From Macrostomum lignano (taxonomy: Eukaryota), in the NCBI GenBank assembly GCA_002269645.1, contig NIVC01000657.1, positions 124,001 through 188,000 of the forward strand: a stretch of 64,000 bases of DNA, read 5' to 3'. This document shows positions 26,301 through 63,853 of the stretch, piece after piece. The translations under genes and the position numbers were made by a program. Position 1 is the stretch's first letter. Each line of letters begins with the position of its first letter. The notes beneath the pieces were generated by a model. The model was not told the origin of the DNA. It was given only the letters and a program-made list of their open reading frames with translations, and did no database searches.

Positions 26301-29300
26301 ATAAAAATAATAGGCATTAACAAGAAGCCTTCGGCGACATTGTCCCGCAACCAGCGTTGAAGCAATTCAGCACATTCCTTCCTTGCTAATTTTTCTCCCA
26401 TTTTTTGGTCATTTACTTCTACCATTGGTAGAAATAAACTGTTAGGTTGAATTACATCATCGCCCATTAAGACAGTCTTCTCAACACAAGTCTCCACCTG
26501 TAGCAACTCACGGCTTGAGCATCCTCTCCACCTGTAGCAACTCACTTCTCCCACGGCTTGAGCATCCTCTCCACCTGTAGCAACTCACTTCTTCCACTGC
26601 TTGAGCATCCCTCTGATTGAATTAACATGACATCAAAAGTCCACCGTATTTATAATTTGAAAAAGCATCAACCATTTACCAAAAACAGTCAATAGTTGAA
26701 CACAGAAATAAACTCACATCTAGCCAAGAAGAGTTTCTCAGTCATCTGAATAACCGGATAAATCTGCAGTGGGAAAGTGAAGATCACTCCCAGGATGAGT
26801 GTAGCATCCAGTATGACAACGAACAGAGATTGGGTAGGCAGATTTTGCACCACAATCTGTCTGGTGTCCTGGCCATAACGCAGGTAACCAATAGTGCCAA
26901 CACCGCCAAGTATAGCTGTCACAACCACTAGGGAGCCGCGTAGGAACGAGCGAAAATTATGTCGGTTGTCTTCCATGCTGGATTCAATTGGGATTACCTG
27001 TTGGGATGTTGAAATTTGACATCTTTTAAGTTGGAATCATGGTGCAATTTGACAGGCCAATTGAGCGCCACAACTGAGACTTCAGTGTGATTTTAGCACC
27101 ACAACTGAGACTTTAGTGCCAATTAAGCGCCACAACTGATATTTTAGCGCCAATAAGTGCCACAAAAAATGAGATTTTAGCGCCAATTAAGCGCCAGAAC
27201 TGATATTTTAGCGCCAATAAGTGCCACAAAAAATGAGATTTTAGCGCCAATTTAGCGCCACAACTGAGACTTCAGTGTGATTTTAGCACCACAACTGAGA
27301 CTTTAGCACCAATTAAGCGCCAGAACTGATATTTTAGCGCCAATAAGTGCCACAAAAATGAGACTTCAGCGCCAATTTAGCGCCACAACTGAGACTTCAG
27401 TGTGATTTTAGCACCACAACTGAGACTTTAGCACCAATTAAGCGCCAGAACTGATATTTTAGCGCCAATAAGTGCCACAAAAAAAGAGATTTTAGCGCCA
27501 ATTTAGCGCCACAACTGAGACTTTAACGCCAATTTAGCGCCACAACTGAGACTTCAGTGCCAATTTAGCGCCACAACTGAGACTTTAACGCCAATTTAGC
27601 GCCACAACTGAGACTTCAGTGCCAATTTAGCGCCATAACTGAGACTTCAGCGCCAATTAGCACCACAACAACGGAGAATTTAGCGCAAATTCAGCGCCAC
27701 AACTGAGACATTAGCGCTAATTTAGTGTCACAACGGATTTATGTTGTGATTCTTTAATATTTTCTGTTAAACCAAATGGTTTTCTATAGGTCACAGTACT
27801 CGTATTATGCAGTAAATATTTAATCACACAGCCACTGACTCCGTTAATAAACCTTAAGTAAAGGTCTCCAAGAACTAATTCTCCAGGGCCGTTCTGGCTC
27901 GTGAAACAGATAAAATAAAATTCGACCCCTGCTGAGAAAAGTAGGTTTCAAACTCTCTTACTTACACAAACTTTATAGATAAGATTTAAAGCAGATCTGA
28001 CCTCTTTCGAATCTTTCCTCAACAAGCATTTGGTTCACAGACATGGCAAGCATTCACAGTTATAGTAGAACGCTGCACGCTAACACTATATATTCTACAA
28101 CATTACTTTCTGGACTTTCGACTTTACAAACCTCTGTATGTCAAAATGAGAAAAATACTTGAATTTCAACCTACAAGAATGGAAAATATTTTTTGCCAGG
28201 GAGCAGTGTCCTTCCATCACAATCACAATGCACTTCCTTTTTGCCGATGCATGCATGCTAAAAGTGCACATTGTTGATACTGGGGTTTCGATTTAAAGTA
28301 CTAAAGCACTAAAGCACTAAAGTATTTAAGTACTAAAGTACTAGTTCACTATAGTACAACTGAAGTACTTAAGTACTAAAGTACTAATTCACTATAGTAC
28401 AACTGAAGTACTTAAGTACTAAAGTACTAATTCACTAAAGTACTAATGCACTAAAGTACTAATGCACTAAAGTACTAATGCACTAAAGTACTAATGCACT
28501 AAAGTACTAATGCACTAAAGTACTAATGCACTAAAGTACTAATGCACTAAAGTACTAATGCACTAAATGCACTAAAGTATTAATGCACTAAAGTACTAAT
28601 GCACTAAAGTACTAATGGACTTAAGTACTAATGCACTAAAGTACTAATGCACTAAAGTACAAGCTATAAAAGAGGATAGAGCTGTTGCTTACCGTTCCAA
28701 TCCCTTCGTAGGACACGGCCACCATCCCAATATACACTGGCAGAGTGGCACCTGTAGCCTGTTGAACAGTGTCGCTAACAGAGAACTGATGCAGCATAAC
28801 GGCTAGGACAGCTACAACTCCGGCACAGATGCTGATATTAGCTACAACACTAACGCTGCCCATACTGCGAATATTGCGAATCAAAGCGAAGCCAAGAAAC
28901 AGAGGCAACGGCGCGCAAACTAGAAGCCATAGAGGCGGCACAGACCAAGTTGGAGTCTCCGTAAATCCGTCCAAATCGCTGTTTTGCTGCTCCGCCTGAG
29001 TGTGATAATCGTAAGCCTGCGGGATTTGTTGGGAGATTGGGAATATCATTTTTGGGGGGTTAGAGTGCAACAGTAACTTATGCCTTATGCCTGAAGGGTT
29101 TTCGTACGAATCACAGGCATGAGGGCCAAGCCTAAGGCACAGAGAGAGTACATGCCTGACGATAAGAAAGTCAAGGAGGGCCGCTGTACACATTCGGTAT
29201 GTCAGGAGTCAGCAGAATGGGCAGAATTGCTTCATCGCCGCTTGTGGGACGGGACATACATGCCCAACACCCGACCGACCCAGCTGATTCGGCCGGGTGG

Positions 29301-38343: not shown

Positions 38344-41300
38344 TCACTGCCCAGAGGTAAGAGTTACCAGTAGATCTTCAGCATCATCTGGCAGAGGCGG
38401 CAACAGAGGCTGCTGTTGCTGCTGCTGGGTTGGTATTAAATTCGAAGCCAATTCTTCATCATCAACATCTTCGTCGTCTTCCTCATCCAAATCGTCATCG
38501 TCGCCCTCTTCATCTAGTTCGGCATCGTCAATGGCGGTTTCGTTGGCTGTGGCTGCAGCGGCAGAATCAGCAGCGGTGATGCCAGTCGAAGACGCGGAGG
38601 CGGCGCTGTCAGCGGAGGCGGCCAGGACCGCACGCGGCAGCAAGCGCCTCACGTGCTCTCTGAAAAGCGTCGCGTTTAATATCTTGCATCAATCCGCTAT
38701 AGCTATACTCAGTGCAAAATAGATGAGATTATGCTCAGATTATGCGGATCAGCTTGTGTGAATGTCAACTTAAGCTAAGGACCCGAGTGACTGCACAATC
38801 GATAACTTTCTGGACCCAGTTGACTAGAAACGACGAGACCCGGTCCCTTTCCTTAGTAAGGCCTTAGTATCTAGTCGTTGCCTTGAAGGAGCTTCCATTC
38901 CATGAGTCCCAAGTTAAACATTGAATCCCTTCTTGAGTACTTTCCTTGGGTTCCTAAAGTATTTTGAACTTCATTCCAACGCTTAAATTGACATCCGCTT
39001 TTACAGACTCGAAATTTTGCAAGTGACCTGTAAGACGTCTTTGATGACGTGCAATTCTGAGCGTCAGCAAGGGTATCAACTCGAGACTGGATTTGGCTTA
39101 CTTTTCGGGATAATTGAATTGTTTCTAGTAATCTTCCTTTTCTGGATTCTTACATGGAACTCTGCAGGGTGGATTTTGACCCTAACATCAAACCGAATGT
39201 CTGGATTCTGACCCGGATACCAAACTTAATGTCTGGATTCTGACCCGGACACCAAGCTTAATGTCTAAATTCTGACCCTGACATTAAACCAAATGTCTGG
39301 ATTCTGACCCTGACACCAAACTTAATGTCTGGATTCTGACCCTGACATCAAACCGAATGTCTGGATTCTGACCCGGATACCAAACTTAATGTCTGGATTC
39401 TGACCCGGAAATCAAACCGAATGTCTGGATTCTGACCCGGACACCAAGCTTAATGTCTGGATTCTGACCCGGACACCAAGCTTAATGTCTGGATTCTGAC
39501 CCGGACACCAAACTTAATGTCTGGATTCTGACCCGGACATCAAACCGAATGTCTGGATTCTGACCCTGACATCAAACCGAATGTCTGGATTCTGACCCTG
39601 ACATCAAACCGAATGTCTGGATTCTGACCCTGACATCAAACCGAATGTCTGGATTCTGACCCTGACATCAAACCGAATGTCTGGATTCTGACCCTGACAT
39701 CAAACCGAATGTCTGGATTCTGACCCTGACATCAAACCGAATGTCTGGATTCTGACCTTGACATTTTATCTGCAAGGTACACGTAAAGACGCATAAAGAC
39801 AATCCAACGAAGAATAATATATAAATAAATATGCTACACAACGTTATTCAAAGACTGATAAGTTTACATCGTATTAACATCGTATTACCTGGTCAGCTGT
39901 CGAAATTCTGCCATATTTGACTCCGAGTACCAACCGAAGGTGTCGTGACAAACCGGTTGAATTGGTGCAGCTGCGACGCGTTCGGCAATGGACGGCACGT
40001 GAATGTGGCAGAGCTGCAGGCACAGCTGGCCAACCCGGGGCAGCCGGTCCGGCTCCAGTGAGAACTCCGAACCGGCCGACACCGAGCGGCCGTGACGACG
40101 AATTTGACGTACGCGGACGTCCAGGCACTGGTAGATCGCAGCACCTTCAGACGGGTGATGAGTTGAGACTTCAAGTTGAATTGAAACTGGTCAAAAGTTG
40201 ACAGTAGAAATCTGTTCAGATCCTTCACTTACAGCAGGGATCGGCAAACTTTTTCCCTTCAGGGCCGCATAGAGAACCCAGCGCATGACTGCAGGCCAGA
40301 GGGGGGAGAGGAGAAGGAACAGAAGAAGAGAACTAGGAGAAATGAGAGGTGAGGTAATATAGGAAGAGAGTTGAGAGGAGAGGAGAGAGGAGAGGGGAGG
40401 AGAAAGAGAAGAGAAGGAGAAGAGAGAGGAGTAAAAAGGAGAGGAAAGGAGAAGAGAAAGGTGAGAGAAGAAACAAACTTTGAGCGGGAGGGATTGTGAA
40501 GTTTTAAAGAACCCGAGGGCCGGATGTGGCCCGCGGGCCCGAGTTTGCCGACCCATGACTTACAGGGGGGGGGCATCACAAACCCGAAAAATCACAACTC
40601 CGAAATTGATAGCAACACACATCATAAACCCGAAAAATCATAACTCCGAAATTGATAGCAACACACATCATAAACCCGAAAAATCATAACTCCGAAATTG
40701 ATAGCAACACACATCATAAACCCGAAAAATCATAACTCCGAAATTGATAGCAACACACATCATAAACCCGAAAAATCACAACTCCGAAATTGATAGCAAC
40801 ACACATCATAAACCCGAAAAATCACAACTCCGAAATTGATAGCAACACACATCATAAACCCGAAAAATCACAACTCCGAAATTGATAGCAACACACATCA
40901 TAAACCCGAAAAATCATAACTCCGAAATTGATAGCAACACACATCATAAACCCGAAAAATCACAACTCCGAAATTGATAGCAACACACATCATAAACCCG
41001 AAAAATCACAACTCCGAAATTGATAGCAACACACATCATAAACCCGAAAAATCACAACTCCGAAATTGATAGCAACGCACATGACCAAACTAGTGTTGAA
41101 CATTGCTAGAACTTTCGGAGTTATGATATTTCGGGTTAGTGATATTTTGGGTTTATGATGGAAAGTGCTTTCGGAGGTGTGATTTTTCGGGTTTATGATG
41201 GCGACCACTTACAGGGTCCTTACTAGCTTTCCTAAATGCTTCAGGGGGTCCTCAATTAATCCTTTCAGATCGTTTCCCATCTTACTGTTAGAAGCTACTT

Positions 41301-43542
41301 CTCAAATCTTTTCAATGGTCCCCGCTACCATCAGGTCCTATAATGGACGCTGTTTAGTCACCAGATCCCACCCCAAGAAAACAATGAGAAGCCCACCTGA
41401 CTCAACAATGGGATTATACCCAAAGCGCAGCCACAGATGATGCCAAGGCCCTCTGTACATGTGATAGGCCTTAGCCTTGATCAGCAGTTTAGCCTGGCTC
41501 CTATTAGCAATATCGCGTAGGCAATGAGACACGTAGGCAATCGATATAATGGGAGTTTCAGCTAAAAGCTGGTCTAAACGTTCCAGCACGCGCTGCGATC
41601 GAAGGTCTCTCAGCCTGGTCACTTGGGCTTCAATCTCAGGCGTGGGGCCGGTGGGTGCGCCAGACTTGCGCAGATCCGCCAGAGTGGTCGACACTGTCAG
41701 ACCGCAGCGACTCTTTCTAGTGAACATGCGCGGTCCAGCGACGTCAGGATCGGCAACGGAGGCGGCGGCGGCGGCCGCTTGAGGTCCAGAATCCTCGGGA
41801 TCGAAGCGCATCGGCTCCCAGAGTCGATAGTCGCTTTGCGCGTCCGGCCGCGATAACGGCATAGTGACGAGGTGCAGCGGTACATCATCGCGACAGAACC
41901 AGTCTTCTACCTGGCGGTTTTTGGGGATGAGGGATTAAATTATTTTTGAGCTGATCGGCTCCACTGCGGAAATCCAAATGTGCCATTTTGAAACACGATT
42001 GTGCCATTTTTTAATCCAAATGTGCCATTTTTCCATCAGGGTGTGCCCTTTTTAAATCCACATGTACCATTTTGAAACACGATGTGCCATTTTTAAATCT
42101 AAATGTGCCATTTTGAAACACGATGTACCATTTTTAAATCTAAATGTGCCATTTTGAAACACGATGTGCCATTTTTAAATCTAAATGTGCCATTTTGAAA
42201 CACGATGTACCATTTTTAAATCTAAATGTGCCATTTTGAAACACGATGTGCCATTTTTAAATCTAAATGTGCCATTTTGAAACACGATTGCGCCATTTTT
42301 AAATATAAATGTGCCATTTTGAAACACGATTGCGCCATTTTTAAATCCAAATTTGCCATTTATTCATTAGGGTGTGCCACTTTTAAATCCAAATGTGCCA
42401 TTTTGAAGCACGTTTGTGCCACTTTTAAATCCAAATGTGCCATTTTGAAATCCAAATGTGCCATTTTGAAGCACGTTTGTGCCACTTTTAAATCCAAATG
42501 TGTCATTTTTAAAACGAAAGTGAAAACAACAATAAATCTTGTCACATGAGCACACAGCGCACCTGATCAAACGGTCTCGAAGGTACCAAATCGTCGTACA
42601 GGTCGCGATACTGTTCGAGATTTGGCCCGGACCGAATAAATGTCAGATATTGCAAATCTGCCAGACCATTGAATTCGTAGGTGCAGCCGCTTTGACCAAG
42701 GCATTCGATTTGAAAGCGTTCATCGCCTGTGACTTTGTGCCGCTGTCTGCAGTGAACGGTTTATGCACTCTTTATCAAGGAGGGCTTACAAACCAATGCC
42801 CGCAAAGCCTCTCTATATCCGGCCCTCGGGTTCTTTAAAACTTCACAATCTCTCCCGCTCAAAGCTTGTGTCTCTTCTTAGCTTTCTTCTCTCACCTTTC
42901 TCTTCTTCTCTTCTCTCTTCTCCTCTCCTCCACTCCTCTTCTCTCCTCTCCCTCTTCTCTTCTCTTTTCTTCGCTCCTCTTCACTCGTCTTCTCTTTACT
43001 CCTCTCACTTCTCCTATTTCATCTCCCCTTTCCTCTCCTTTCGTCAACTCTCTTCCTTTATTCCCTCACCTCTCATTTTTCCTAGTTCTCTTCTCTGTCC
43101 CCTCCCCTATTTTTAGCACAATTTAATAAATCTGTTGCTAAAATATTAAAAAAGCAGAAAAATGCAAAATTTTTTGAAAAAAACGAGATAAAGCATGGCA
43201 TGCGCACTATTTAAAAAAGCACTCGAGCTACCCATTGAAAAAAAATTTATAACCGCACCTGACTACTCGCAGTACAAAAGCAGCTCGGCTAGTTACGGGA
43301 TCTGCGACAGCCACTCTAGGCAGAGCATCCTCTGGATTGAATTGCATCTGCAGTCTCAGCTGGTGCTGCTGCTGCTGCTGAAGCCGCTGTTGCTGTTGCT
43401 GCTGCAATTGAGCAGCAAAAGACTCTGCGAGTTTGTCCAGCCCGCCAAGCATCCGGATCGCTCGATCTTCATTGCGAACTATGCCGGGAAATTCCACGGC
43501 TAATAGTTGCCGATTGGATAGGGGCACCTCCTGCTGCTGCGA
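38344..43542 (-). CDS. GTF3C5: TFIIIC subunit 5 (tau95/Tfc1 homologue), 5 exons (43542-43259, 42746-42563, 41910-41397, 40144-39889, 38659-38344); initiator ATG not present in these exons
   Basis: LLAVEFPGIV...MLGG, YEFNGLADLQYL, YRGPWHHLWLRFGYNP, AIYQCLDVRVR, QLCLQLCHI...GW and an acidic C-tail. All introns are GT-AG with consistent phases (2,0,1,2). 517 codons plus Met. Confidence 0.9.
39185..39762. repeat. 32-bp minisatellite (GTF3C5 intron 4)
   Basis: TCTGGATTCTGACCCTGACATCAAACCGAATG units. Confidence 0.93.
40235..40557. mobile_element. 323-bp hAT MITE with a GA-rich core
   Basis: TIRs CAGGGATCGGCAAACT and AGTTTGCCGACCCATG, 8-bp TSD ACTTACAG, and a CGGCCCGCGGGCC-type subterminal motif typical of hAT MITEs. 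Confidence 0.9.
40566..41206. mobile_element. ~640-bp TIR element (Merlin- or Mutator-like) containing a 46-bp tandem array derived from its own end
   Basis: Ends GG..CATCACAAACCCGAAAAATCAC and GTGATTTTTCGGGTTTATGATGGCGACC. TSD ACTTACAG(GG), 8-10 bp. About 11 units of AAACCCGAAAAATCATAACTCCGAAATTGATAGCAACACACATCAT. Confidence 0.8.
41975..42512. repeat. ~20/21-bp dimeric (41-bp) minisatellite (GTF3C5 intron 2)
   Basis: TGTGCCATTTTGAAACACGA and TGTGCCATTTTTAAATCTAAA units. Confidence 0.9.
42780..43115 (+). mobile_element. Degenerate copy of the CT-rich hAT MITE (GTF3C5 intron 1)
   Basis: About 50 nt (ATCCGGCCCTCGGGTTCTTTAAAACTTCACAATCTCTCCCGCTCAAAG) is the near-exact reverse complement of 40476-40525. 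Confidence 0.75.
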
Positions 43543-43759
43543 CTGCAATTACGCAATATATAAATAAAACTGCTTTGCAAAGTTTACTTTCGATACATAT
43601 CGGATCAATCCAAAATTCACGCTCACATAGGGTGTACAGCGGCACTTTGACTTTCCAGTCGTCAGGCATGTACACTTTCAGTGCATTGGGGTTGTTTCTC
43701 GTGGATGTGCATCGCGCTATAACCCTCTTCGGCCAATTTTCGTGTACTAAAAACCCCAA

Positions 43760-43845
43760 ATGAATGCGGCCGCGCACGGAATCGAACCAGGGGCCACGGG
43801 GCGAGAGTAAAAAATTGCGTCTACTGCTGAGCTGAGCTGAGCTAC
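43760..43845 (-). promoter_or_regulatory. tRNA-like Pol III type-2 element: A-box-like segment and perfect B-box
   Basis: GGTTCGATTCC at 43788-43778; A-box/D-arm-like TAGCTCAG...GCTCAGCAGTAGA upstream; a T6 run between the boxes. Related to the 21.7-kb element. Confidence 0.65.
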
Positions 43846-44659
43846 AAACAAAACAAAAAAACGAATACGAAAAATAGCAAAATAAATTAGAAGTTTTACC
43901 CTCTATGCAGGTAAGCCTACCCTTACAACTAGTAGAAGATTCTTAAGAAACACCTATTATAGCCCATCGCAAAAACAAAAAATAACAAAACTTCATTATA
44001 ACATAATTGTGCTCGACCAAAAAAGAGAGAAAATTAGTTTGAACAAAACTCGAGTAAGAAATATTTGAATAATAAGTTTATTTTTATAATAAATTCGTCC
44101 AAGTGCTTAGGGAGTCAAGAACACACGAGTATAAAAGAGTTTTGAGTAACATTATTACAATTTATTTTTTTAAAGTTATTAAAGTTAGACAAATCACAGA
44201 TCAAAAATGGTACACAGCGTAAACTTTAAGTAAAATTGTGGACGGAAAGGAAATCTAAATTTTAAGGTAATTATGTAATGTAATTAGAAGCTCCGCTTCG
44301 CTGTTTTCATTACTCATAATCTTTAGTTGGTATCTGTATAGTTTAAATAACAAATTATTAGACAAAGCTATTAAATAATAACAGAACTCTTTAGATGCTA
44401 GTAAAGATTTACTAGTCAATTATTAACAATTCAGAGTTGTTTGAAAACATTACTGCAATCGTTTCCTTTAGACTTAATTCACTATCTTTTCAATTTCTAA
44501 AGAAGTATAACAAGTTCCTACTTTCAGCTTAGTAGCAGGGAAGCATACGTAAGCTAGTTTATAAAAATAAGGCTGTTAAAACGACTGCGGAGCTTGCAGA
44601 CTTGATGTAAACAATTTGTTAAGGTGCATTAGCCCAGCCTGGTACACTGGGGAAGGCAA

Positions 44660-45072
44660 TAAAAATTGGGTGGCGGGGCGGGGGTAGAGATTTTGTCTTG
44701 AACGGCGCAGTAGGTGGTTCAGTTGGGGGAGGGTTGTAAGAAAAAAACTGGGGGTGGCAGGGCGGGGGTAGAGATTTTGTCTTGAACGGCGCAGTAGGGG
44801 GTTCAGTTGGGGGAGGGTGGTAAGAAAAAAAACTGGGGGTGGCAGGGCGGGGGTAGAGATTTTGTCTTGAACGGCGCAGTAGGGGTTCAGTTGGGGGAGG
44901 GTGGTAAGAAAAAAAACTGGGGGTGGCAGGGCGGGGGTAGAGATTTTGTCTTGAACGGCGCAGTAGGGGGTTCAGTTGGGGGAGGGTGGTAAGAAAAAAA
45001 ACTGGGGGTGGCGGGGCGGGGGTAGAGATTTTGTCTTGAACGGCGCAGTAGGGGGTTCAGTTGGGGGAGGGG
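44660..45072. repeat. ~85-bp G-tract-rich tandem repeat (~5 copies)
   Basis: Each unit has about six runs of 3-5 G; GGCGGGGGTAG recurs at 44761, 44846, 44930 and 45015. Confidence 0.92.
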
Positions 45073-45422
45073 GAGGTAACAGGTCCAGGCTAATAAACGA
45101 GTCCTGTTATAAAATACAATAAAATGTTCATGCTTATTTAACTTTTTACTTCACTGAATTTAAGAGGAACAGCCCGATCGCGCGCCTTTCCCGCTACGTC
45201 CTTCCCGATGCTGCCCTGCAGCTAAAGAACTGAAAGTAGCTTGCTTGCACGCAAATGCGCTGATTGCGCCTAATCTAGTTATTATACATGCACTATTATT
45301 GTCTGGGATCCCCTTCAATGCATGTACAATATACGCATATGATAGTTAAGTTGCAAAAGAAACCAGAGTAGCAAAAAAAGACAACAGTGGTTATATGTGT
45401 AGATAAAAGACACACGAGTCTG

Positions 45423-47815
45423 TTAATCCTGGTTGATCTTCTTAAACTCGGCCACCTGAGCCAGCACGTGAGCTAGTATAGCCTTGGCGTCTCGTTTATC
45501 TGCTGGCAGTTTGTTAGTAACGCCCAGAATCTCTCCGCACTGCCTAACATAGTATTCCAAGTCTTCGTCTGTGCACTTGTTAGTAATCTGAGCTAGGCGA
45601 ACTTTCTCCGTGCTAAACTGTTCGTCTAGATCGAACAGTTCCAGTGCCGGGGCTGGCAACTCGCGAAAGCTGGGCGGAAACACGGCCGGTTGTAGAGGCG
45701 GTAGCGGTGTCTCAAATTGCGGCTGAATCAGCGACAATTGCTCGTGCTTGACGCGCAGCTTGTCGTAGGCAGCGATAGCCTTGGGCACCAGGCTGGTGTC
45801 CATCACGTATAGAGACGAGTCGTACAGGCTCAACACATCTTTTGGTACATCGTCGCTCTCTTGTAGGCAGGCCTTGAGCTCTTCGGACAGGGCTTCAATG
45901 TCCGGCGCGTGCTGATAGTCGGCCACTTCCGGCTCTTCAGCATCGATGGCGTTCAGTTGCAAACTGTCCGAGGACAGGTACTGAAGTAGCACTTCCAGCA
46001 GCTGGGACAGGGGCGGGTTGGATGGAAGTTTAGTGTTCGAGTTTAGGTATTGGAGTTTAGTGTCCGAGTTTAGGTATTGGAGTTTAGTGTCCGAGTTTAG
46101 GTATTGGAGTTTAGTGTCCGAGTTTAGGTATTGGAGTTTAGTGTCCGAGTTTAGGTATTGGAGTTTAGTGTCCGAGTTTAGGTATTGGAGTTTAGTGTCC
46201 GAGTTTGGGTATTGGAGTTTAGTGTCCGAGTTTAGATATTGGAGTTTAGTGTCCGAGTTTGGGTATTGGAGTTTAGTGTCCGAGTTTGGGTATTGGATTT
46301 TTGTGTCCGAGTTTAGGTATTGGATTTTAGGGTCCGAGTTTGGTATTGGACTTTAGTTTCCGAGTTTAGGGGTTTGATTTTAGGTATCTGATGTTAGCTA
46401 ATAAAGTTAGAGTATGTCCGAATTTTTGTGTACGAGTACCAGTTTAGTGTCCGAGTCTAGGTGCTGGATTTTTGTGTCCGAATTTGAACTGAGTTTTCAA
46501 GGTGTCCAACACCAAGGGTGTTTAAGTTTGGATGTCCAATGGATGTCAAATTTTAATATAGGAATTTATGCGTTAAAGATGTGTGTCTTAGACGGAGTCT
46601 ACAAGATGTAGTGTGTCCAAGGTTTAGATCGAGTATCCGAGATTGATACTAGTGCCCGAGATTAATATTAGTTTCCAAGATCAATTATTAGTGTCCGAGA
46701 TTAATATTAGTGTCTGAGATCAATATTAGTTTCTGAGATTATTATTAGTGTCTGAGATTAATATTAGTTTCTGAGATTATTATTAGTGTCCGATTTTAAT
46801 AATAGTGTCCGAGATCAATATTAGTGTCCGAGATTGATATTAGTGTCCAAGATAAATATTTCTGTCCGAAAACAATATTAGTGACCGAGATCAATATTAG
46901 TGTCCGAGATCAATATTAGTGTCCGAGATCAATATTAGTGTCCGAGATCAATACTAGAGTCCGATCACAAACTGTTAATTCACTTACCTTGAAATTGTCC
47001 TCCTTGTCGATATACTCGTCCGAGAAGGCGGCGGCAGCGCCGAACACGGCCACTTTGCCGCCCCCGCCGCTGCCAGCAGCGCGGCTACTAGACGCGGGAG
47101 CAGCAGAAGCAGCAGCGGCAGCAGCATTGGCAAAGGCGCAGACAGGCCTATTAAGCGGAAACGCTACGCTCCCAGTGCTGAGAACAGCCACGGCCGGCTT
47201 AGCGACATTAAGCGTGGCGCCGTACGGATAGACAAAGTGCAGCGAAGATTTGTGCACCGACGATGAGTCACCGTTGCCGCCGATACCGGCAATCATCGGC
47301 GGGAGAGCTTTGCCAGCGGCCTCGCTAATCGCCCTATTCAGCACACCGTTGGGCACGTAGCATTCCTTGGGGTGAAAGTACTTATAGTAGGCTGTGCGAA
47401 CAACGCAATCGCTATTTACTGAGATGCCCAACTCTTCTAGAAAGAAATTCACGTTAGTATCGAATCGCGACTCGCCGCCTTCGCCCATGAGCACCAGGAT
47501 GCTGCCGCCCTTGGCCAAGTAGGCCTTCATCGCGTCGAACTCGGACACAGAGAACTTCTCATTAGGCAAAGCGACTAGAAATATTCTAGCCTCGGACAGT
47601 CGCGACTCGGTCACTTCGTCTTTTAGGCTGACAATTTTCCAGCTGGATTTCAATTTCCTAGTCAAAGTTTTGAAACCATAGTTGGGACCGAAAGCATCGT
47701 GTTTGGAGGCGTTAATTAGCAGGACATTGCTGCCGGCGATTCCAGCTGAAGCGTCTGGATGGTCGCGGCCTCCGTTCATCACCGCCGATGGCTCCGTGGG
47801 CGCCGGGGCTGGCAT
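45423..47815 (-). CDS. IFT52: Intraflagellar transport protein 52, 2 exons (47815-46988, 46001-45423), ~468 aa
   Basis: GEGGESRFDTNVNFFLEE, VVRTAYYKYFHPKE, FVYPYGATLNVAKPA, LIQPQFETPLPPLQPAVFPPSFRELP, LELFDLDEQFS and VAEFKK. Phase-0 GT-AG intron. Confidence 0.96.
46025..46962. repeat. Compound 27-bp and 19-bp minisatellite filling the IFT52 intron
   Basis: AGGTATTGGAGTTTAGTGTCCGAGTTT and GAGATCAATATTAGTGTCC units with a decayed middle. Confidence 0.9.
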
Positions 47816-47880
47816 GGCTGCGGCCAAATTGCAGTAACAGTGAATTGAGATTGACTTGTCTTGGACACCTTGGGTTTATA

Positions 47881-61492: not shown

Positions 61493-63853
61493 TTAGCTGT
61501 TGAAAGTGTCTTTCAGACTGGCAGTTTGCATTGGAATGCAGTCTTGCAGATTTTGTTTGAAGTCGTCAAGACTGCGCACTTCAATGCCCTGCAAAGGATA
61601 TATATGTACACGAGTACAATTAGGGCAATGGTTGAAATATTGATAAGCACTTACTGCTAGTTTATCCTGTTAAAGCTTTACGCTATTTTTACTTAGATGA
61701 CGAGACACTCAGATTTTTTAATTTGCCTGAGAGCCTAAAGGTACTGTATACCTGTAATTATTCATAACTACACGCTGAAGGCAACATTTCCAGTTTAAAA
61801 AAAAACAGAAAAGCGCATTTACACTCGTACAATGCTGCTGGCTCACCTGATAGGTAGCATAATAATCGTCCTGAGCATTAAAGGTGAACTGCTGCCTATT
61901 GATTTTGTGAACACTCAGCACACGCCTGTCTTGCGAACCCTGTTTCAGCCATTTCTAAAATATATAGTTTACAGTGATTACATGTAATACAGATATGTAC
62001 TACAATGTAAGTGGGAAGTTTTTGATTGGAAAAATCAAATAATCAAATCATTCGATTGGTACGAGCACTAGCTGATGAATAGCTTTGACATAGATATTGT
62101 ACGTCGTACATTGGGGCAGTAGTGGAAGGGCTGGGTAAATGTACATTGGGGCAGAAAGGAAAGGAGTCGAAGGACTGAGCAACAATATGTGCATTGGGGT
62201 AAGGAGTGGAAAGTCTTGGAATTAAGCACATGTACATCGGGGCAGGAGTGGAAGGACTGGGCACATCTACATTTGGGTAGAAGTGGAAGGACTGGGACAT
62301 GTACAATAGCCACACAGTACGAGCTATAACGACGTTGGTATGTATATTGCTGGGAAAATTTGTGCCAATGCGTCAAAGTCTTGAAACTTTAAACGTTCAC
62401 TTCGGATTATCGAACGCTTACTAGTGGGTAAACAACTAGACAGCTCACCTTCCAATAATTGTAAAGATCCTTTTTGCTAATTCTATCCAGAATAGCTTTG
62501 ACATTGGTGTCCAAACTATTGGTATCCCAGCTGAAATCGTAGTCGCCGCAGGTGATGTGTCGCCAGTACAGCTCATGCTGCCTGTTTAAATTTGGCGCAG
62601 TAAACAGACGTGTCGCAAGCTGCTGCACTCGACTCTTCATACCCGCCAGCTGCTCCTTGGTTATGGAATCCACTGTTTTACCGACGCATGCGATTACCAA
62701 CTCGATTGTTGTTTCAATCTGCGTGCAGATGTTTAGCAACAGGTCAATATTCATGCAGTAAAACAGCTTGCTACATGTCATTCTGAATGTAAATCCGCAA
62801 GAAAATACAGTAGCAAAATATTCTGTCAGCCAAGGTCTCAAGAAACTGGGGCACAGCGTCAAAGGGCGTGTCTCTGAATCGTCCACCGGCAGTTAAAGAA
62901 ACGCCGACTGAGAATGCCGTGTCCTTGCTGTGAATGCATATATCTACTGCATCTAATACCTAGAATAATTGCATGCAGAAGGCAGGTTGTGAGCGCGCAG
63001 GCACAACGCTTTCGACGACATGGTTCCACGGCCAATGCTCCGAGGCAATTCCGAGCGCGCCAATACTGTACGCAGGCACCCATGCACTCATTATACACAC
63101 GCTCACACAGAGTGCACAGCTTGACCTTCTAATCGTCAGGCATGTACACTCTCTGCGCCTTGGGAGTTGGTCCTCATGGCTGTGGATAGCACGACGGCTC
63201 TTCTAATGAGAAGTTCAAACCAAGAGACTTACCGCAACGGGATGCGACTCGGAGACTAGCTCAATGACGATGCAATTGGCGTTGCAGCCAATCATCGTGT
63301 CCCACCTTAAATCGCGTTTTGTACAATCGGGCAGTTTTGTACAGAGTGTCAGAGCTTCTTTCAGTAGCCACAAGCAGCACTTATGCCAGAACCGACGGAA
63401 GAAGAAGTCGTCATATTTTGACGCTTGCTTTTTTAACCCTCCCGATATCGCAGTCGGCATCTGAAGCAGCAGGCCGCAAACCGACTTGGTCAATGCAGCG
63501 TCACCTTTCTTCAACCTCGTAGTCCGGCTGGTAAGTTCGATGCTTCTGTTAGTAGCAAAGTTCAACCGGATGAAATGGTGACTGCCCCTTGGTAGGAGTC
63601 GCTCAGAACAGCGCATAAAAAATGGATCCAATCGAAACGTGTCCGCTGGACGCCGCGAAAGTGGTGGAAGAACAGCTGTAATTGAGTCAACCAGTGAGAT
63701 GACTTGCTCAGCAGTGAGATTGCCCAGCGCCAGAATCTCAGCATACAGTTCTGGCCGGCTGGGCCAGTTCTCGCGTTCCAGCGGAGTGGCATGAGCGGGA
63801 TTGGAAAAGTGATGCGCTATGAAACTTGACGGATTGATTTCCACTTCTCGGTC
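61493..63853 (-). CDS. 3' part of a divergent peptidase M16A (insulin-degrading enzyme/nardilysin-like) gene; continues beyond the window
   Basis: Exons ~63853-63233, 63125-~62960, 62718-62449, 61954-61847 and 61588-61493. EILALGNLTAEQV resembles IDE EALLHGNITKQ; YWRHITCGDYDF resembles YWGEIISQQYNF; RRVLSVH resembles RHKVSVH; SLDDFKQNL resembles NMTEFKRGL. One junction is unresolved. Confidence 0.7.

What the first reader, a model, noticed from the sequence alone, without database searches (positions are those of the whole stretch)
43500..43560. GTF3C5 has no start codon of its own; a spliced-leader AUG would complete it in frame
The minus strand reads ..GCG TAA TTG CAG|TCG CAG CAG CAG GAG GTG CCC.. 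An in-frame stop precedes the acceptor, and no Met occurs before the conserved VEFPG motif. I found no ATG-bearing phase-0 exon in the proximal upstream sequence by eye. Flatworm SLs end in AUG, which can serve as the initiator (established in schistosomes). SL plus this exon gives MSQQQEVPL.., 518 aa, about the length of human GTF3C5 as I recall it. Translation of a core Pol III factor would then depend on trans-splicing.
Basis: partly seen in the sequence, partly recalled or inferred. Interest (0 to 1): 0.75.

Follow-up and report, generated by a model that had tools for sequence, protein, structure and literature searches.

The report
Flatworm gene borrowing its start codon
The Macrostomum lignano gene for RNA polymerase III factor GTF3C5 has no start codon of its own and almost certainly takes its AUG from the trans-spliced leader RNA, a flatworm mechanism already documented in other genes and species.

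Summary
The window is Macrostomum lignano. On the minus strand a five-exon GTF3C5 (tau95) gene has an open frame that starts exactly at an acceptor (TTGCAG|TCG, exon start 43542). An in-frame TAA lies 6 nt upstream. There is no ATG before the conserved LAVEFPG motif; the first in-frame ATG is codon 31, inside the Tau95_N domain.

- The published M. lignano spliced leader (SL) is 35 nt and ends in ATG.
- The published trans-acceptor motif [T/C]TNCAG matches this site.
- All three genomic copies carry a 5'-partial GenBank CDS that starts within 3 nt of the acceptor.
- In all three copies the gene shares a transcriptional-unit name with the upstream same-strand gene IFT52, which suggests a polycistronic unit.
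- The 1.9-kb upstream spacer holds fewer ATG-phase-0-GT candidate exons than shuffled sequence. The best-placed candidate lies in a dispersed repeat.

I could not reach SL-junction reads or translation data. A second AG 6 nt downstream (exon start 43536) is also in frame and may be the acceptor actually used.

The mechanism, the flatworm SL 3'-AUG acting as initiator, has been established since 2006. This is therefore a new member of a known kind. Interest is modest.

The parts
43543..43548 (-). Trans-splice acceptor TTGCAG; the exon would begin at 43542
   Evidence: Sequence. It matches the published M. lignano SL acceptor motif [T/C]TNCAG exactly (PMC8629364). It is identical in all three genomic copies.
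43537..43542 (-). TCGCAG, a second possible acceptor 6 nt downstream (exon start 43536), also phase 0, giving MQQEV...
   Evidence: Sequence. The GenBank partial CDS starts at 43539. That start fits this acceptor if the annotators' SL-trimmed reads kept the ATG, which would give a -3 offset, the same offset seen at IFT52. It matches the motif less well (TCGCAG).
43549..43551 (-). In-frame TAA immediately upstream of the acceptor; it closes the frame in the unspliced precursor
43259..43542 (-). GTF3C5 coding exon 1 (284 nt), with no ATG before codon 31
   Evidence: Donor is CAG|GTGCGG.
43483..43503 (-). Codons for LAVEFPG, the conserved first strand of the Tau95_N triple-barrel domain
   Evidence: The Pfam Tau95_N match starts at residue 15. 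The motif is present in all 30 orthologues inspected, 2-33 residues after their Met (median 13); here it would be 14 residues after an SL Met.
43450..43452 (-). First in-frame genomic ATG (Met31, MLGGLDKL), used by the UniProt models
   Evidence: Starting here would remove Tau95_N profile positions 2-17.
42563..42746 (-). GTF3C5 exon 2
41397..41910 (-). GTF3C5 exon 3
39889..40144 (-). GTF3C5 exon 4
38344..38659 (-). GTF3C5 exon 5, ending in the TGA stop at 38346-38344
   Evidence: The protein is identical to PAA79001.1 apart from that entry's missing first Ser.
43543..45422 (-). Outron / intergenic spacer (1,880 nt) between the IFT52 stop and the GTF3C5 acceptor
   Evidence: It contains an 85-nt x 4.8 tandem repeat at 44668-45071 and a dispersed repeat fragment at 43618-43726. 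It holds 6 ATG..phase-0..GT candidates, against 18 +/- 7 in shuffles.
45423..47818 (-). Upstream same-strand gene IFT52 (BOX15_Mlig001340g7), probably the preceding cistron of the same transcriptional unit
   Evidence: IFT52 and GTF3C5 carry consecutive gene numbers under one transcriptional-unit prefix in all three copies (g7/g8, g4/g5, Mlig014743 g2/g3).

Best explanation
This is the Macrostomum lignano orthologue of GTF3C5 (TFIIIC subunit 5, tau95), GenBank BOX15_Mlig001340g8. It lies downstream of IFT52 on the same strand and is probably transcribed with it as one precursor.

The mature mRNA is made by spliced-leader trans-splicing. The 35-nt SL, which ends ...UUGCAUG, is joined to the acceptor at 43542 (TTGCAG|TCG) and/or to the AG 6 nt further on at 43536. 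The upstream outron, including its in-frame TAA, is discarded.

The last three bases of the SL then become the first and only AUG ahead of the conserved N-terminus, about 32 nt from the cap and in phase 0. Translation from it gives a 518-aa protein, MSQQQEVPLSNRQLLAVEFPG... (or 516 aa, MQQEV..., from the second AG).

Shown here:
- the gene structure, the frame and the absence of a genomic ATG;
- the match to the published acceptor motif;
- the need for an upstream start, since the conserved motif is translated;
- the annotation's 5' end at the acceptor, and the transcriptional-unit name shared with IFT52.

Taken from the literature: the SL sequence, and the fact that a flatworm SL AUG can initiate translation.

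Inferred, not shown: that SL is joined at this site in vivo, and that ribosomes start at its AUG.
For: - **Organism and gene.** (PAA79001.1 is identical apart from its missing first Ser; Pfam Tau95_N and Tau95; human GTF3C5, 8clk_E, E = 2e-21).
- **No genomic start.**
- **The N-terminal segment must be translated.** LAVEFPGIVRNEDRAIRMLGG aligns to the family motif in all 30 orthologues inspected. With an SL Met the lead is 14 residues, against a median of 13.
- **SL ends in ATG; acceptor motif [T/C]TNCAG.** PMC8629364 and PMC10468722, which calls the final ATG a likely 'translation start codon'.
- **Annotation pipeline.** It cuts transcriptional units at peaks of SL-containing reads (PMC5730564). 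The resulting 5'-partial CDS starts at 43539 in all three copies, so the annotated transcript 5' end is at 43539-43541.
- **Shared transcriptional unit.** IFT52 and GTF3C5 share a unit prefix with consecutive numbers in all three copies. The FSH1 gene next door carries a different prefix in two of the three copies, so the prefix discriminates.
- **Upstream ATG-exon test.**
- **Precedent.** In S. mansoni the SL AUG is in frame in 28% of trans-spliced transcripts and more than 40 cDNAs need it (PMC9851317). Use of the SL AUG is conserved between S. japonicum and E. granulosus (PMC3510090).
Against: - No SL-junction read, RACE product, ribosome footprint or peptide for this gene could be reached with these tools.
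- The exact 518-aa MSQQQ... sequence is not in the 15-billion-protein collection.
- The GenBank CDS starts 3 nt after the 43542 junction, not at it. That offset is unexplained and points instead to the 43536 AG.
- GenBank's 'partial' flag alone proves nothing. FSH1 and IFT52 are also flagged partial although they have their own ATGs.
- The three copies are more than 95% identical throughout the spacer, so they give no test of selection.
- The raw intergenic distance (1,880 nt) exceeds the 1-kb repeat-adjusted operon threshold of PMC8629364. Only 513 nt of repeats could be identified here.
- The Echinococcus orthologue has its own genomic ATG, so dependence on the SL is not a conserved feature of this gene.
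Confidence: 0.8

Rival explanations
1. A cis-spliced 5' exon in the 1.9-kb spacer supplies the ATG. The same acceptor would be shared between cis- and trans-splicing, and the SL form would be a minor or untranslated isoform.
For: - Flatworm acceptors are often shared between cis- and trans-splicing (PMC12582326).
- The annotators' pipeline cuts at SL sites and could hide an upstream exon.
- One candidate, ATG CCT GAC GAC TGG AAA GTC AAA|GTGCCG (43669-43646, 103-nt intron), has a donor resembling this gene's own weak donors GTGCGG and GTGCGC.
Against: - Only 6 ATG-phase-0-GT candidates allow an intron of at least 40 nt, against 18 +/- 7 in dinucleotide shuffles. None has G|GTR.
- The best-placed candidate lies inside a dispersed repeat with two other ~76%-identical copies in the window.
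- Six independent gene models found no such exon.
- IFT52 occupies the strand immediately upstream.
Confidence: 0.08
2. Translation starts at the first genomic in-frame ATG (Met31, MLGGLDKL), as in the UniProt models, giving an N-terminally shortened protein. The 90 nt between the acceptor and that ATG would be 5'UTR.
For: UniProt A0A1I8HKK0, A0A1I8JA11 and A0A1I8HEW3 are modelled this way. It needs no assumption about trans-splicing.
Against: - The 'UTR' would encode, in frame and without a stop, the most conserved N-terminal motif of the family. That is LAVEFPGIVRNEDRAIR, compared with human VCVEYPGVVRDVAKML and Echinococcus FVVQYPGIVKNDERAIE. Such conservation over this evolutionary distance implies the segment is translated.
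- Starting at Met31 would remove Tau95_N profile positions 2-17.
- If the SL is attached, its AUG is the first AUG and is in frame, so scanning ribosomes meet it first.
Confidence: 0.06
3. Initiation is at a non-AUG codon within exon 1 (for example GTG at codon 6), or the locus is a non-functional copy.
For: GTG occurs at codons 6 and 16. M. lignano carries duplicated gene copies (PMC8629364).
Against: - All three copies keep an intact 5-exon, ~515-codon frame with canonical splice sites and both Pfam domains.
- No other GTF3C5 cluster from M. lignano appeared in the searches.
- A near-cognate start is unnecessary if the SL AUG is present.
Confidence: 0.03

Closest known systems
[quoted passage not shown]
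   Same: The SL ends in AUG. The acceptor is in phase 0 with the main ORF. There is no genomic AUG ahead of the conserved N-terminus. The SL AUG restores an N-terminus of orthologue-like length.
   Different: The species is different: a free-living macrostomorph, an early-branching rhabditophoran, not a neodermatan parasite. GTF3C5 is not named in what I could read of those lists. Here neither the SL junction nor the translation start has been shown experimentally.
GTF3C5 / TFIIIC63 / tau95 (yeast Tfc1, S. pombe Sfc1), subunit of the tauA module of TFIIIC
   Same: Tau95_N triple-barrel and Tau95 domains, the N-terminal (V/I)x(V/I)E(Y/F)PG motif, an acidic C-terminal tail, and a length of about 518 aa (the human protein is about 519 aa, from my own recollection). 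The best solved-structure hit is human GTF3C5.
   Different: About 30% identity to other metazoan orthologues. It has a poly-Gln insertion in the first domain, Ala-rich linkers and no genomic start codon. The orthologues retrieved start with Met; the one whose locus was read (Echinococcus) has a genomic ATG.
SL-resolved operons of M. lignano (Wudarski et al. 2017; Ustyantsev & Berezikov 2021) and of nematodes
   Same: Same-strand neighbours (IFT52 then GTF3C5) carry one transcriptional-unit name. The 5' end of the downstream gene sits at an SL-type acceptor.
   Different: The spacer is long (1,880 nt raw). It falls under the published 1-kb repeat-adjusted threshold only if more of it is repeat than I could show. 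M. lignano has a single SL, not a dedicated SL2 as in C. elegans.

Membership tests
GTF3C5 / tau95 (TFIIIC subunit 5) | N-terminal Tau95_N triple-barrel domain (PF17682) | tested here: met
   56.1 bits (cut-off 23.1), residues 15-129, profile positions 2-121 of 121.
GTF3C5 / tau95 (TFIIIC subunit 5) | Tau95 HTH/DNA-binding domain (PF09734) | tested here: met
   59.1 bits (cut-off 23.7), residues 231-338; aligns to human GTF3C5 chains 8clk_E and 9gi4_A and to S. pombe Sfc1 (4bji_A).
GTF3C5 / tau95 (TFIIIC subunit 5) | Best matches in an unbiased search are GTF3C5 orthologues | tested here: met
   One search gave 488 hits. Those looked up are named General transcription factor 3C polypeptide 5 (Echinococcus, Schistocephalus, Pinctada, Amphibalanus).
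SL-AUG-initiated flatworm mRNA | The organism's spliced leader ends in AUG immediately before its donor site | tested here: met
   From the literature, not from the window. SL = ...TTATTGCATG followed by GTAAG (PMC8629364). The same 3' end occurs in two congeners. No SL RNA gene lies in the window.
SL-AUG-initiated flatworm mRNA | SL is actually joined to this mRNA at the acceptor | tested here: inconclusive
   Only indirect evidence. The acceptor matches the motif [T/C]TNCAG. The 5'-partial GenBank CDS implies a transcript 5' end at 43539-43541 in three copies, from a pipeline that cuts at SL-read peaks. No reads were accessible.
SL-AUG-initiated flatworm mRNA | SL AUG in frame with the main ORF, with no intervening stop | tested here: met
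   phase 0 at 43542 and also at 43536.
SL-AUG-initiated flatworm mRNA | No genomic AUG that could give an orthologue-like N-terminus | tested here: met
   The first in-frame ATG is codon 31, inside Tau95_N. The upstream exon search was negative.
SL-AUG-initiated flatworm mRNA | Translation demonstrably starts at the SL AUG | not testable with these tools
   Needs Ribo-seq, N-terminal proteomics or a reporter.
SL-resolved operon (polycistronic unit) | Adjacent same-strand genes assembled as one transcriptional unit | tested here: met
   Gene names Mlig001340g7/g8, g4/g5 and Mlig014743g2/g3. The naming rule is in PMC5730564. The FSH1 neighbour has another prefix in 2 of 3 copies.
SL-resolved operon (polycistronic unit) | Repeat-adjusted intergenic distance under 1 kb (criterion of PMC8629364) | tested here: inconclusive
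   1,880 nt from the IFT52 stop to the acceptor. I could identify 404 nt of tandem repeat and 109 nt of dispersed repeat. The IFT52 3'UTR length and the full repeat content are unknown.

The most novel reading that the evidence does not exclude
An essential, conserved Pol III initiation factor in M. lignano can only be translated as a full-length protein after SL trans-splicing. If so, use of the SL AUG as an obligatory initiator is not confined to parasitic Neodermata. It would already operate in Macrostomorpha, one of the earliest-branching rhabditophoran lineages, and on the downstream cistron of an IFT52-GTF3C5 transcription unit. That would make it an example of a housekeeping gene evolutionarily locked in to trans-splicing.
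Probability: 0.6. Interest if true: 0.4.

Novelty: new member of a known kind. Interest (0 to 1): 0.3.

Why it matters
**For annotation.** The three GenBank entries are labelled 'partial' and the three UniProt entries start at an internal Met, which loses the first strand of the Tau95_N domain. The correct product is most likely 518 aa, starting with a Met that is not encoded at the locus. Gene finders that require a genomic ATG will mis-model this class of genes across Macrostomum.

**For biology.** It adds a concrete, testable case in a transgenesis-capable flatworm where trans-splicing is needed for protein synthesis and not only for mRNA maturation. It also extends the known SL-AUG mechanism to a free-living, early-branching flatworm. 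It does not reveal a new mechanism.

Tried and rejected
- **N-terminal homology searches.** Two searches aimed to catch SL-bearing transcript fragments or orthologues from other Macrostomum species: a 47-aa query and a 167-aa query that included the SL-encoded peptide. Both returned nothing, not even the known M. lignano protein. The word index is too sparse for short queries, so these are uninformative negatives.
- **Exact look-up of the 518-aa MSQQQ... protein.** It is not in the collection.
- **SL RNA gene in the window.** None within 3 mismatches. There were no Rfam hits in the window and no tRNAs.
- **Supplement searches for the gene IDs or GTF3C5.** Nothing in PMC5730564, PMC5173321, PMC8629364 or PMC10468722. 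Wasik et al. 2015 is not held.
- **Comparison of the three genomic copies.** I wanted to see whether the outron is less conserved than the exons, but the copies are more than 95% identical everywhere apart from repeat-number changes. No signal.
- **Brute-force multi-intron reconstruction of IFT52.** It timed out. A single-intron search solved it.
- **SL-like 5' end of Logan transcript L004.** A literature search for its sequence gave only irrelevant hits.
- **Pseudogene reading.** Considered and rejected, because all copies keep the frame and both domains.
- **The 'partial' flag as proof of a missing ATG.** Rejected, because neighbouring genes with their own ATGs are flagged the same way.
Full report
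**1. What is in the sequence**

On the minus strand the window reads ...gcg TAA TTG CAG|TCG CAG CAG CAG GAG GTG CCC CTA TCC AAT CGG CAA CTA TTA GCC GTG GAA TTT CCC GGC....
- The AG of the acceptor is at 43544-43543 and the exon starts at 43542.
- The TAA at 43551-43549 is in frame.
- No ATG occurs in frame until 43452-43450, which is codon 31.

From open frames and GT..AG boundaries I built a five-exon model: 43542-43259, 42746-42563, 41910-41397, 40144-39889 and 38659-38344. It is 1554 nt, which is 517 codons plus TGA.

It is also in phase 0.

**2. What the gene is and where the window comes from**

- The protein has Pfam Tau95_N (residues 15-129, profile 2-121 of 121, 56.1 bits) and Tau95 (residues 231-338, 59.1 bits).
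- Its best match among solved structures is human GTF3C5 in the TFIIIC complex (8clk_E, E = 2e-21). The alignment begins at NRQLLAVEFPGIVRN / ERRMVCVEYPGVVRD.
- An exhaustive profile-free search found 488 relatives. Those I looked up are named General transcription factor 3C polypeptide 5.
- The closest database entry is Macrostomum lignano PAA79001.1 (BOX15_Mlig001340g8, 'partial'). It is identical to the window protein except that it lacks the first Ser.
- The window corresponds to scaffold NIVC01000657.1 of assembly GCA_002269645.1.
- Two further copies exist: PAA79067.1 (Mlig014743g3) and PAA60348.1 (Mlig001340g5). This fits the partial genome duplication of the sequenced line (PMC8629364).

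**3. The N-terminal segment must be translated**

All 30 orthologues I read begin with a short lead of 2-33 residues (median 13), followed by the motif (V/I)x(V/I)E(Y/F)P(G/A)-x-V-x-N-x-(D/E)-(K/R)-A-(I/L)-x-x-L-G-G. In the window this motif, LAVEFPGIVRNEDRAIRMLGG, lies between the acceptor and Met31, in frame and uninterrupted. A segment conserved from human to flatworm is not 5'UTR.

- Starting at Met31, as the three UniProt models do, would delete profile positions 2-17 of Tau95_N.
- Initiation must therefore lie upstream of about codon 13.
- The genomic frame is closed by TAA just before the acceptor.
- The initiator must come from another exon, either the spliced leader or a cis exon.

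**4. Does the spliced leader fit?**

- The M. lignano SL is CGGTCTCTTACTGCGAAGACTCAATTTATTGCATG (35 nt). It is followed in the SL RNA gene by the donor GTAAG.
- About 30% of genes are SL trans-spliced.
- The motif enriched at trans-acceptors is [T/C]TNCAG, positioned at the junction (PMC8629364). The window's TTGCAG matches it exactly; TCGCAG matches less well.
- The SLs of M. cliftonense and M. hystrix also end ...TTATTGCATG. The authors of that study note that the final ATG is likely a translation start codon (PMC10468722).
- Joining the SL at 43542 gives AUG UCG CAG... = MSQQQEV, with 14 residues before the motif, right at the orthologue median. Joining at 43536 gives MQQEV.
- The SL has no in-frame stop. 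Its AUG would be the first AUG, 32 nt from the 5' end.

That a flatworm SL AUG can serve as initiator is established (Cheng et al. 2006). I could read this only through citing papers:
- 35 S. japonicum genes use it. Of 15 E. granulosus orthologues of these recovered from SL libraries, 10 would use it (PMC3510090).
- All reported parasitic-flatworm SLs end in AUG (PMC12582326).

**5. Is the gene really trans-spliced here?**

I could not reach reads. The indirect evidence is as follows.

The GenBank annotation derives from a pipeline (TBONE) that maps SL-containing reads and cuts RNA-seq 'transcriptional units' at SL peaks and poly(A) sites. ORFs are then called with TransDecoder (PMC5730564).

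In all three copies the CDS is 5'-partial and begins at the CAG at 43539. For an ORF to be called partial from that codon, the transcript model must start at 43539-43541. Any longer model would have added TCG, CAG or TTG, or met the TAA. A transcript end placed within 3 nt of an SL-type acceptor, identically in three copies, is what a trans-splice site produces.

I also reconstructed the upstream same-strand gene, IFT52 (window 47818-45423, one intron), and looked up its entries.
- IFT52 and GTF3C5 are Mlig001340g7/g8 in the window copy, Mlig001340g4/g5 in the second copy, and Mlig014743g2/g3 in the third.
- The prefix is assigned per cluster of transcriptional units.
- The next gene upstream, FSH1, has a different prefix in two of the three copies (Mlig010154g1, Mlig029331g1), so the prefix is not given merely for adjacency.
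- At least one assembled unit per cluster therefore spans IFT52 and GTF3C5. This is evidence for a polycistronic precursor in which GTF3C5 is a downstream cistron with no promoter-proximal exon of its own.

Caveats:
- The 'partial' flag by itself means only that the ORF is open to the model's 5' end. FSH1 and IFT52 are flagged too, although they contain ATGs.
- The raw spacer of 1,880 nt is longer than the 1-kb repeat-adjusted operon threshold of PMC8629364. I could attribute only 513 nt of it to repeats.

**6. The rival: an upstream cis exon with an ATG**

I enumerated every ATG in the 1,880-nt spacer that runs without a stop to a GT in phase 0.
- There are 8, or 6 if the intron must be at least 40 nt. 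Dinucleotide shuffles give 18 +/- 7. None has the G|GTR form.
- The best-placed candidate (43669-43646, MPDDWKVK|GTGCCG) has a donor not unlike this gene's own atypical donors.
- However, it lies within a ~100-nt dispersed repeat (43618-43726) that has two other copies in the window at about 76% identity.
- No gene model in either annotation uses it.

I give this rival 0.08. It would not abolish the SL form, since flatworm acceptors are often shared between cis- and trans-splicing.

**7. Unresolved detail: which AG?**

The GenBank start at 43539 is 3 nt after the 43542 junction. At IFT52 the partial CDS starts GCC ATG, which requires a transcript start 1-3 nt before the exon that follows CGCAG|.

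A uniform -3 offset would fit both IFT52 and a GTF3C5 junction at 43536, but not one at 43542. Such an offset would arise if the ATG was left on the trimmed SL reads and they were mapped end-to-end onto the genomic CAG. The IFT52 model in the third copy does not fit that rule.

By motif and position, as the first AG after the AT-rich tract, 43542 is the better site. By the annotation offset, 43536 is. Both may be used. Both are in frame, so the conclusion does not depend on the choice.

**8. Orthologues**

- Echinococcus multilocularis GTF3C5 has a genomic ATG (L006:2501), with an AG 6 nt upstream that would also be in frame with an SL AUG.
- A Logan transcript contig from an unidentified organism (its protein resembles the cestode orthologues, so probably a flatworm) starts ...AAATTTATGCATG|TAA.... 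This looks like an SL end followed at once by a stop. The gene's own ATG lies 27 nt downstream.
- Lack of a genomic start is therefore not an ancestral property of the gene. It looks specific to the Macrostomum lineage.
- I could not obtain the first exon from another Macrostomum species. A related-species fragment (L005) covers only the C-terminal exons.

**9. Comparison with what is known, and verdict**

The gene is a clear member of the GTF3C5/tau95 family. The start-codon arrangement matches the known class of flatworm mRNAs initiated at the SL 3'-AUG. Three of that class's five defining features were met here, one was inconclusive (the junction itself) and one was untestable (translation).

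What is new is modest: this particular gene, and a well-documented case in a free-living, early-branching flatworm, set within an IFT52-GTF3C5 transcription unit. The practical consequence is that all six public protein models of this gene have a wrong or incomplete N-terminus.

Scores: confidence in the SL-AUG explanation is 0.8, novelty is 'new member of a known kind', and interest is 0.3.

Noticed in passing
window 47818-47800 (minus strand); L001:1700-1760: IFT52's own ATG lies 2 nt after a CGCAG| acceptor, and its GenBank CDS is 5'-partial starting GCC ATG. If SL is joined there, the SL AUG is out of frame. It would open a 13-codon upstream ORF (ATG CCA TGC ... CGG TGA) that overlaps the real start 5 nt downstream. 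Within one transcription unit, the SL AUG would then hinder translation of one gene and be needed by the next.
   Followed up: partly
window 43539 vs 43542/43536; L001-L003 position 6001: GenBank's partial CDS for GTF3C5 starts 3 nt downstream of the TTGCAG| junction in all three copies. The offset is not explained. It may mean that the AG at 43538-43537 is the acceptor actually used.
   Followed up: partly
window 44668-45071: G-rich 85-nt tandem repeat, 4.8 copies, 97% matches, in the IFT52-GTF3C5 spacer. Its copy number accounts for most of the length difference between the three genomic copies.
   Followed up: partly
window 43618-43726 (also 63098-63190 and 29095-29191); 43778-43788: A ~100-nt dispersed repeat fragment sits just upstream of the acceptor. 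About 60 nt further upstream is a tRNA T-arm-like GGTTCGATTCC, possibly a SINE remnant. ARAGORN and Rfam call nothing here.
   Followed up: partly
window 41970-42522, 40574-41082, 39170-39764: Three of the four GTF3C5 introns consist largely of tandem arrays: 41-nt x 12, 46-nt x 11 (98% matches) and 32-nt x 18.6.
   Followed up: no
window 43258, 42562, 41396, 39888 (donor sites, minus strand): All four cis donors of this gene (GTGCGG, GTGCGC, GTGGGC, GTAATA) depart from the published M. lignano consensus GT[G/A]AG. Each is preceded by exonic AG.
   Followed up: no
UniProt A0A1I8HKK0, A0A1I8HEW3, A0A1I8JA11 (P0004-P0006): The older gene models start at internal Met31. Two of them also end prematurely (...EFRQLTRFM), missing exon 5. 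They are mis-annotations of the same gene.
   Followed up: yes
window 43380-43405 (exon 1) compared with L002 and L003: Poly-Gln and poly-Ala tract lengths differ between the three copies, for example QLQQQQQQRLQ against QLQQPQRLQ, and AAAAAAS against AAAAS and AAAAAAAS.
   Followed up: no
L004:1-50 (Logan SRR21676486) and L006:2480-2503 (Echinococcus multilocularis): The L004 orthologue transcript (organism not identified; its protein resembles the cestode orthologues) begins with an SL-like ...TTTATGCATG followed directly by TAA, with the gene's own ATG 27 nt later. The Echinococcus gene has TGTAG| 6 nt before its ATG, in frame. Trans-splicing of GTF3C5 may be widespread in flatworms even where the SL AUG is not needed.
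   Followed up: partly
window ~28000-50900, minus strand: Four same-strand genes lie in a row: FSH1/OVCA2-like hydrolase, IFT52, GTF3C5 and an Aa_trans amino-acid transporter. The order is conserved in the duplicated copies.
   Followed up: partly
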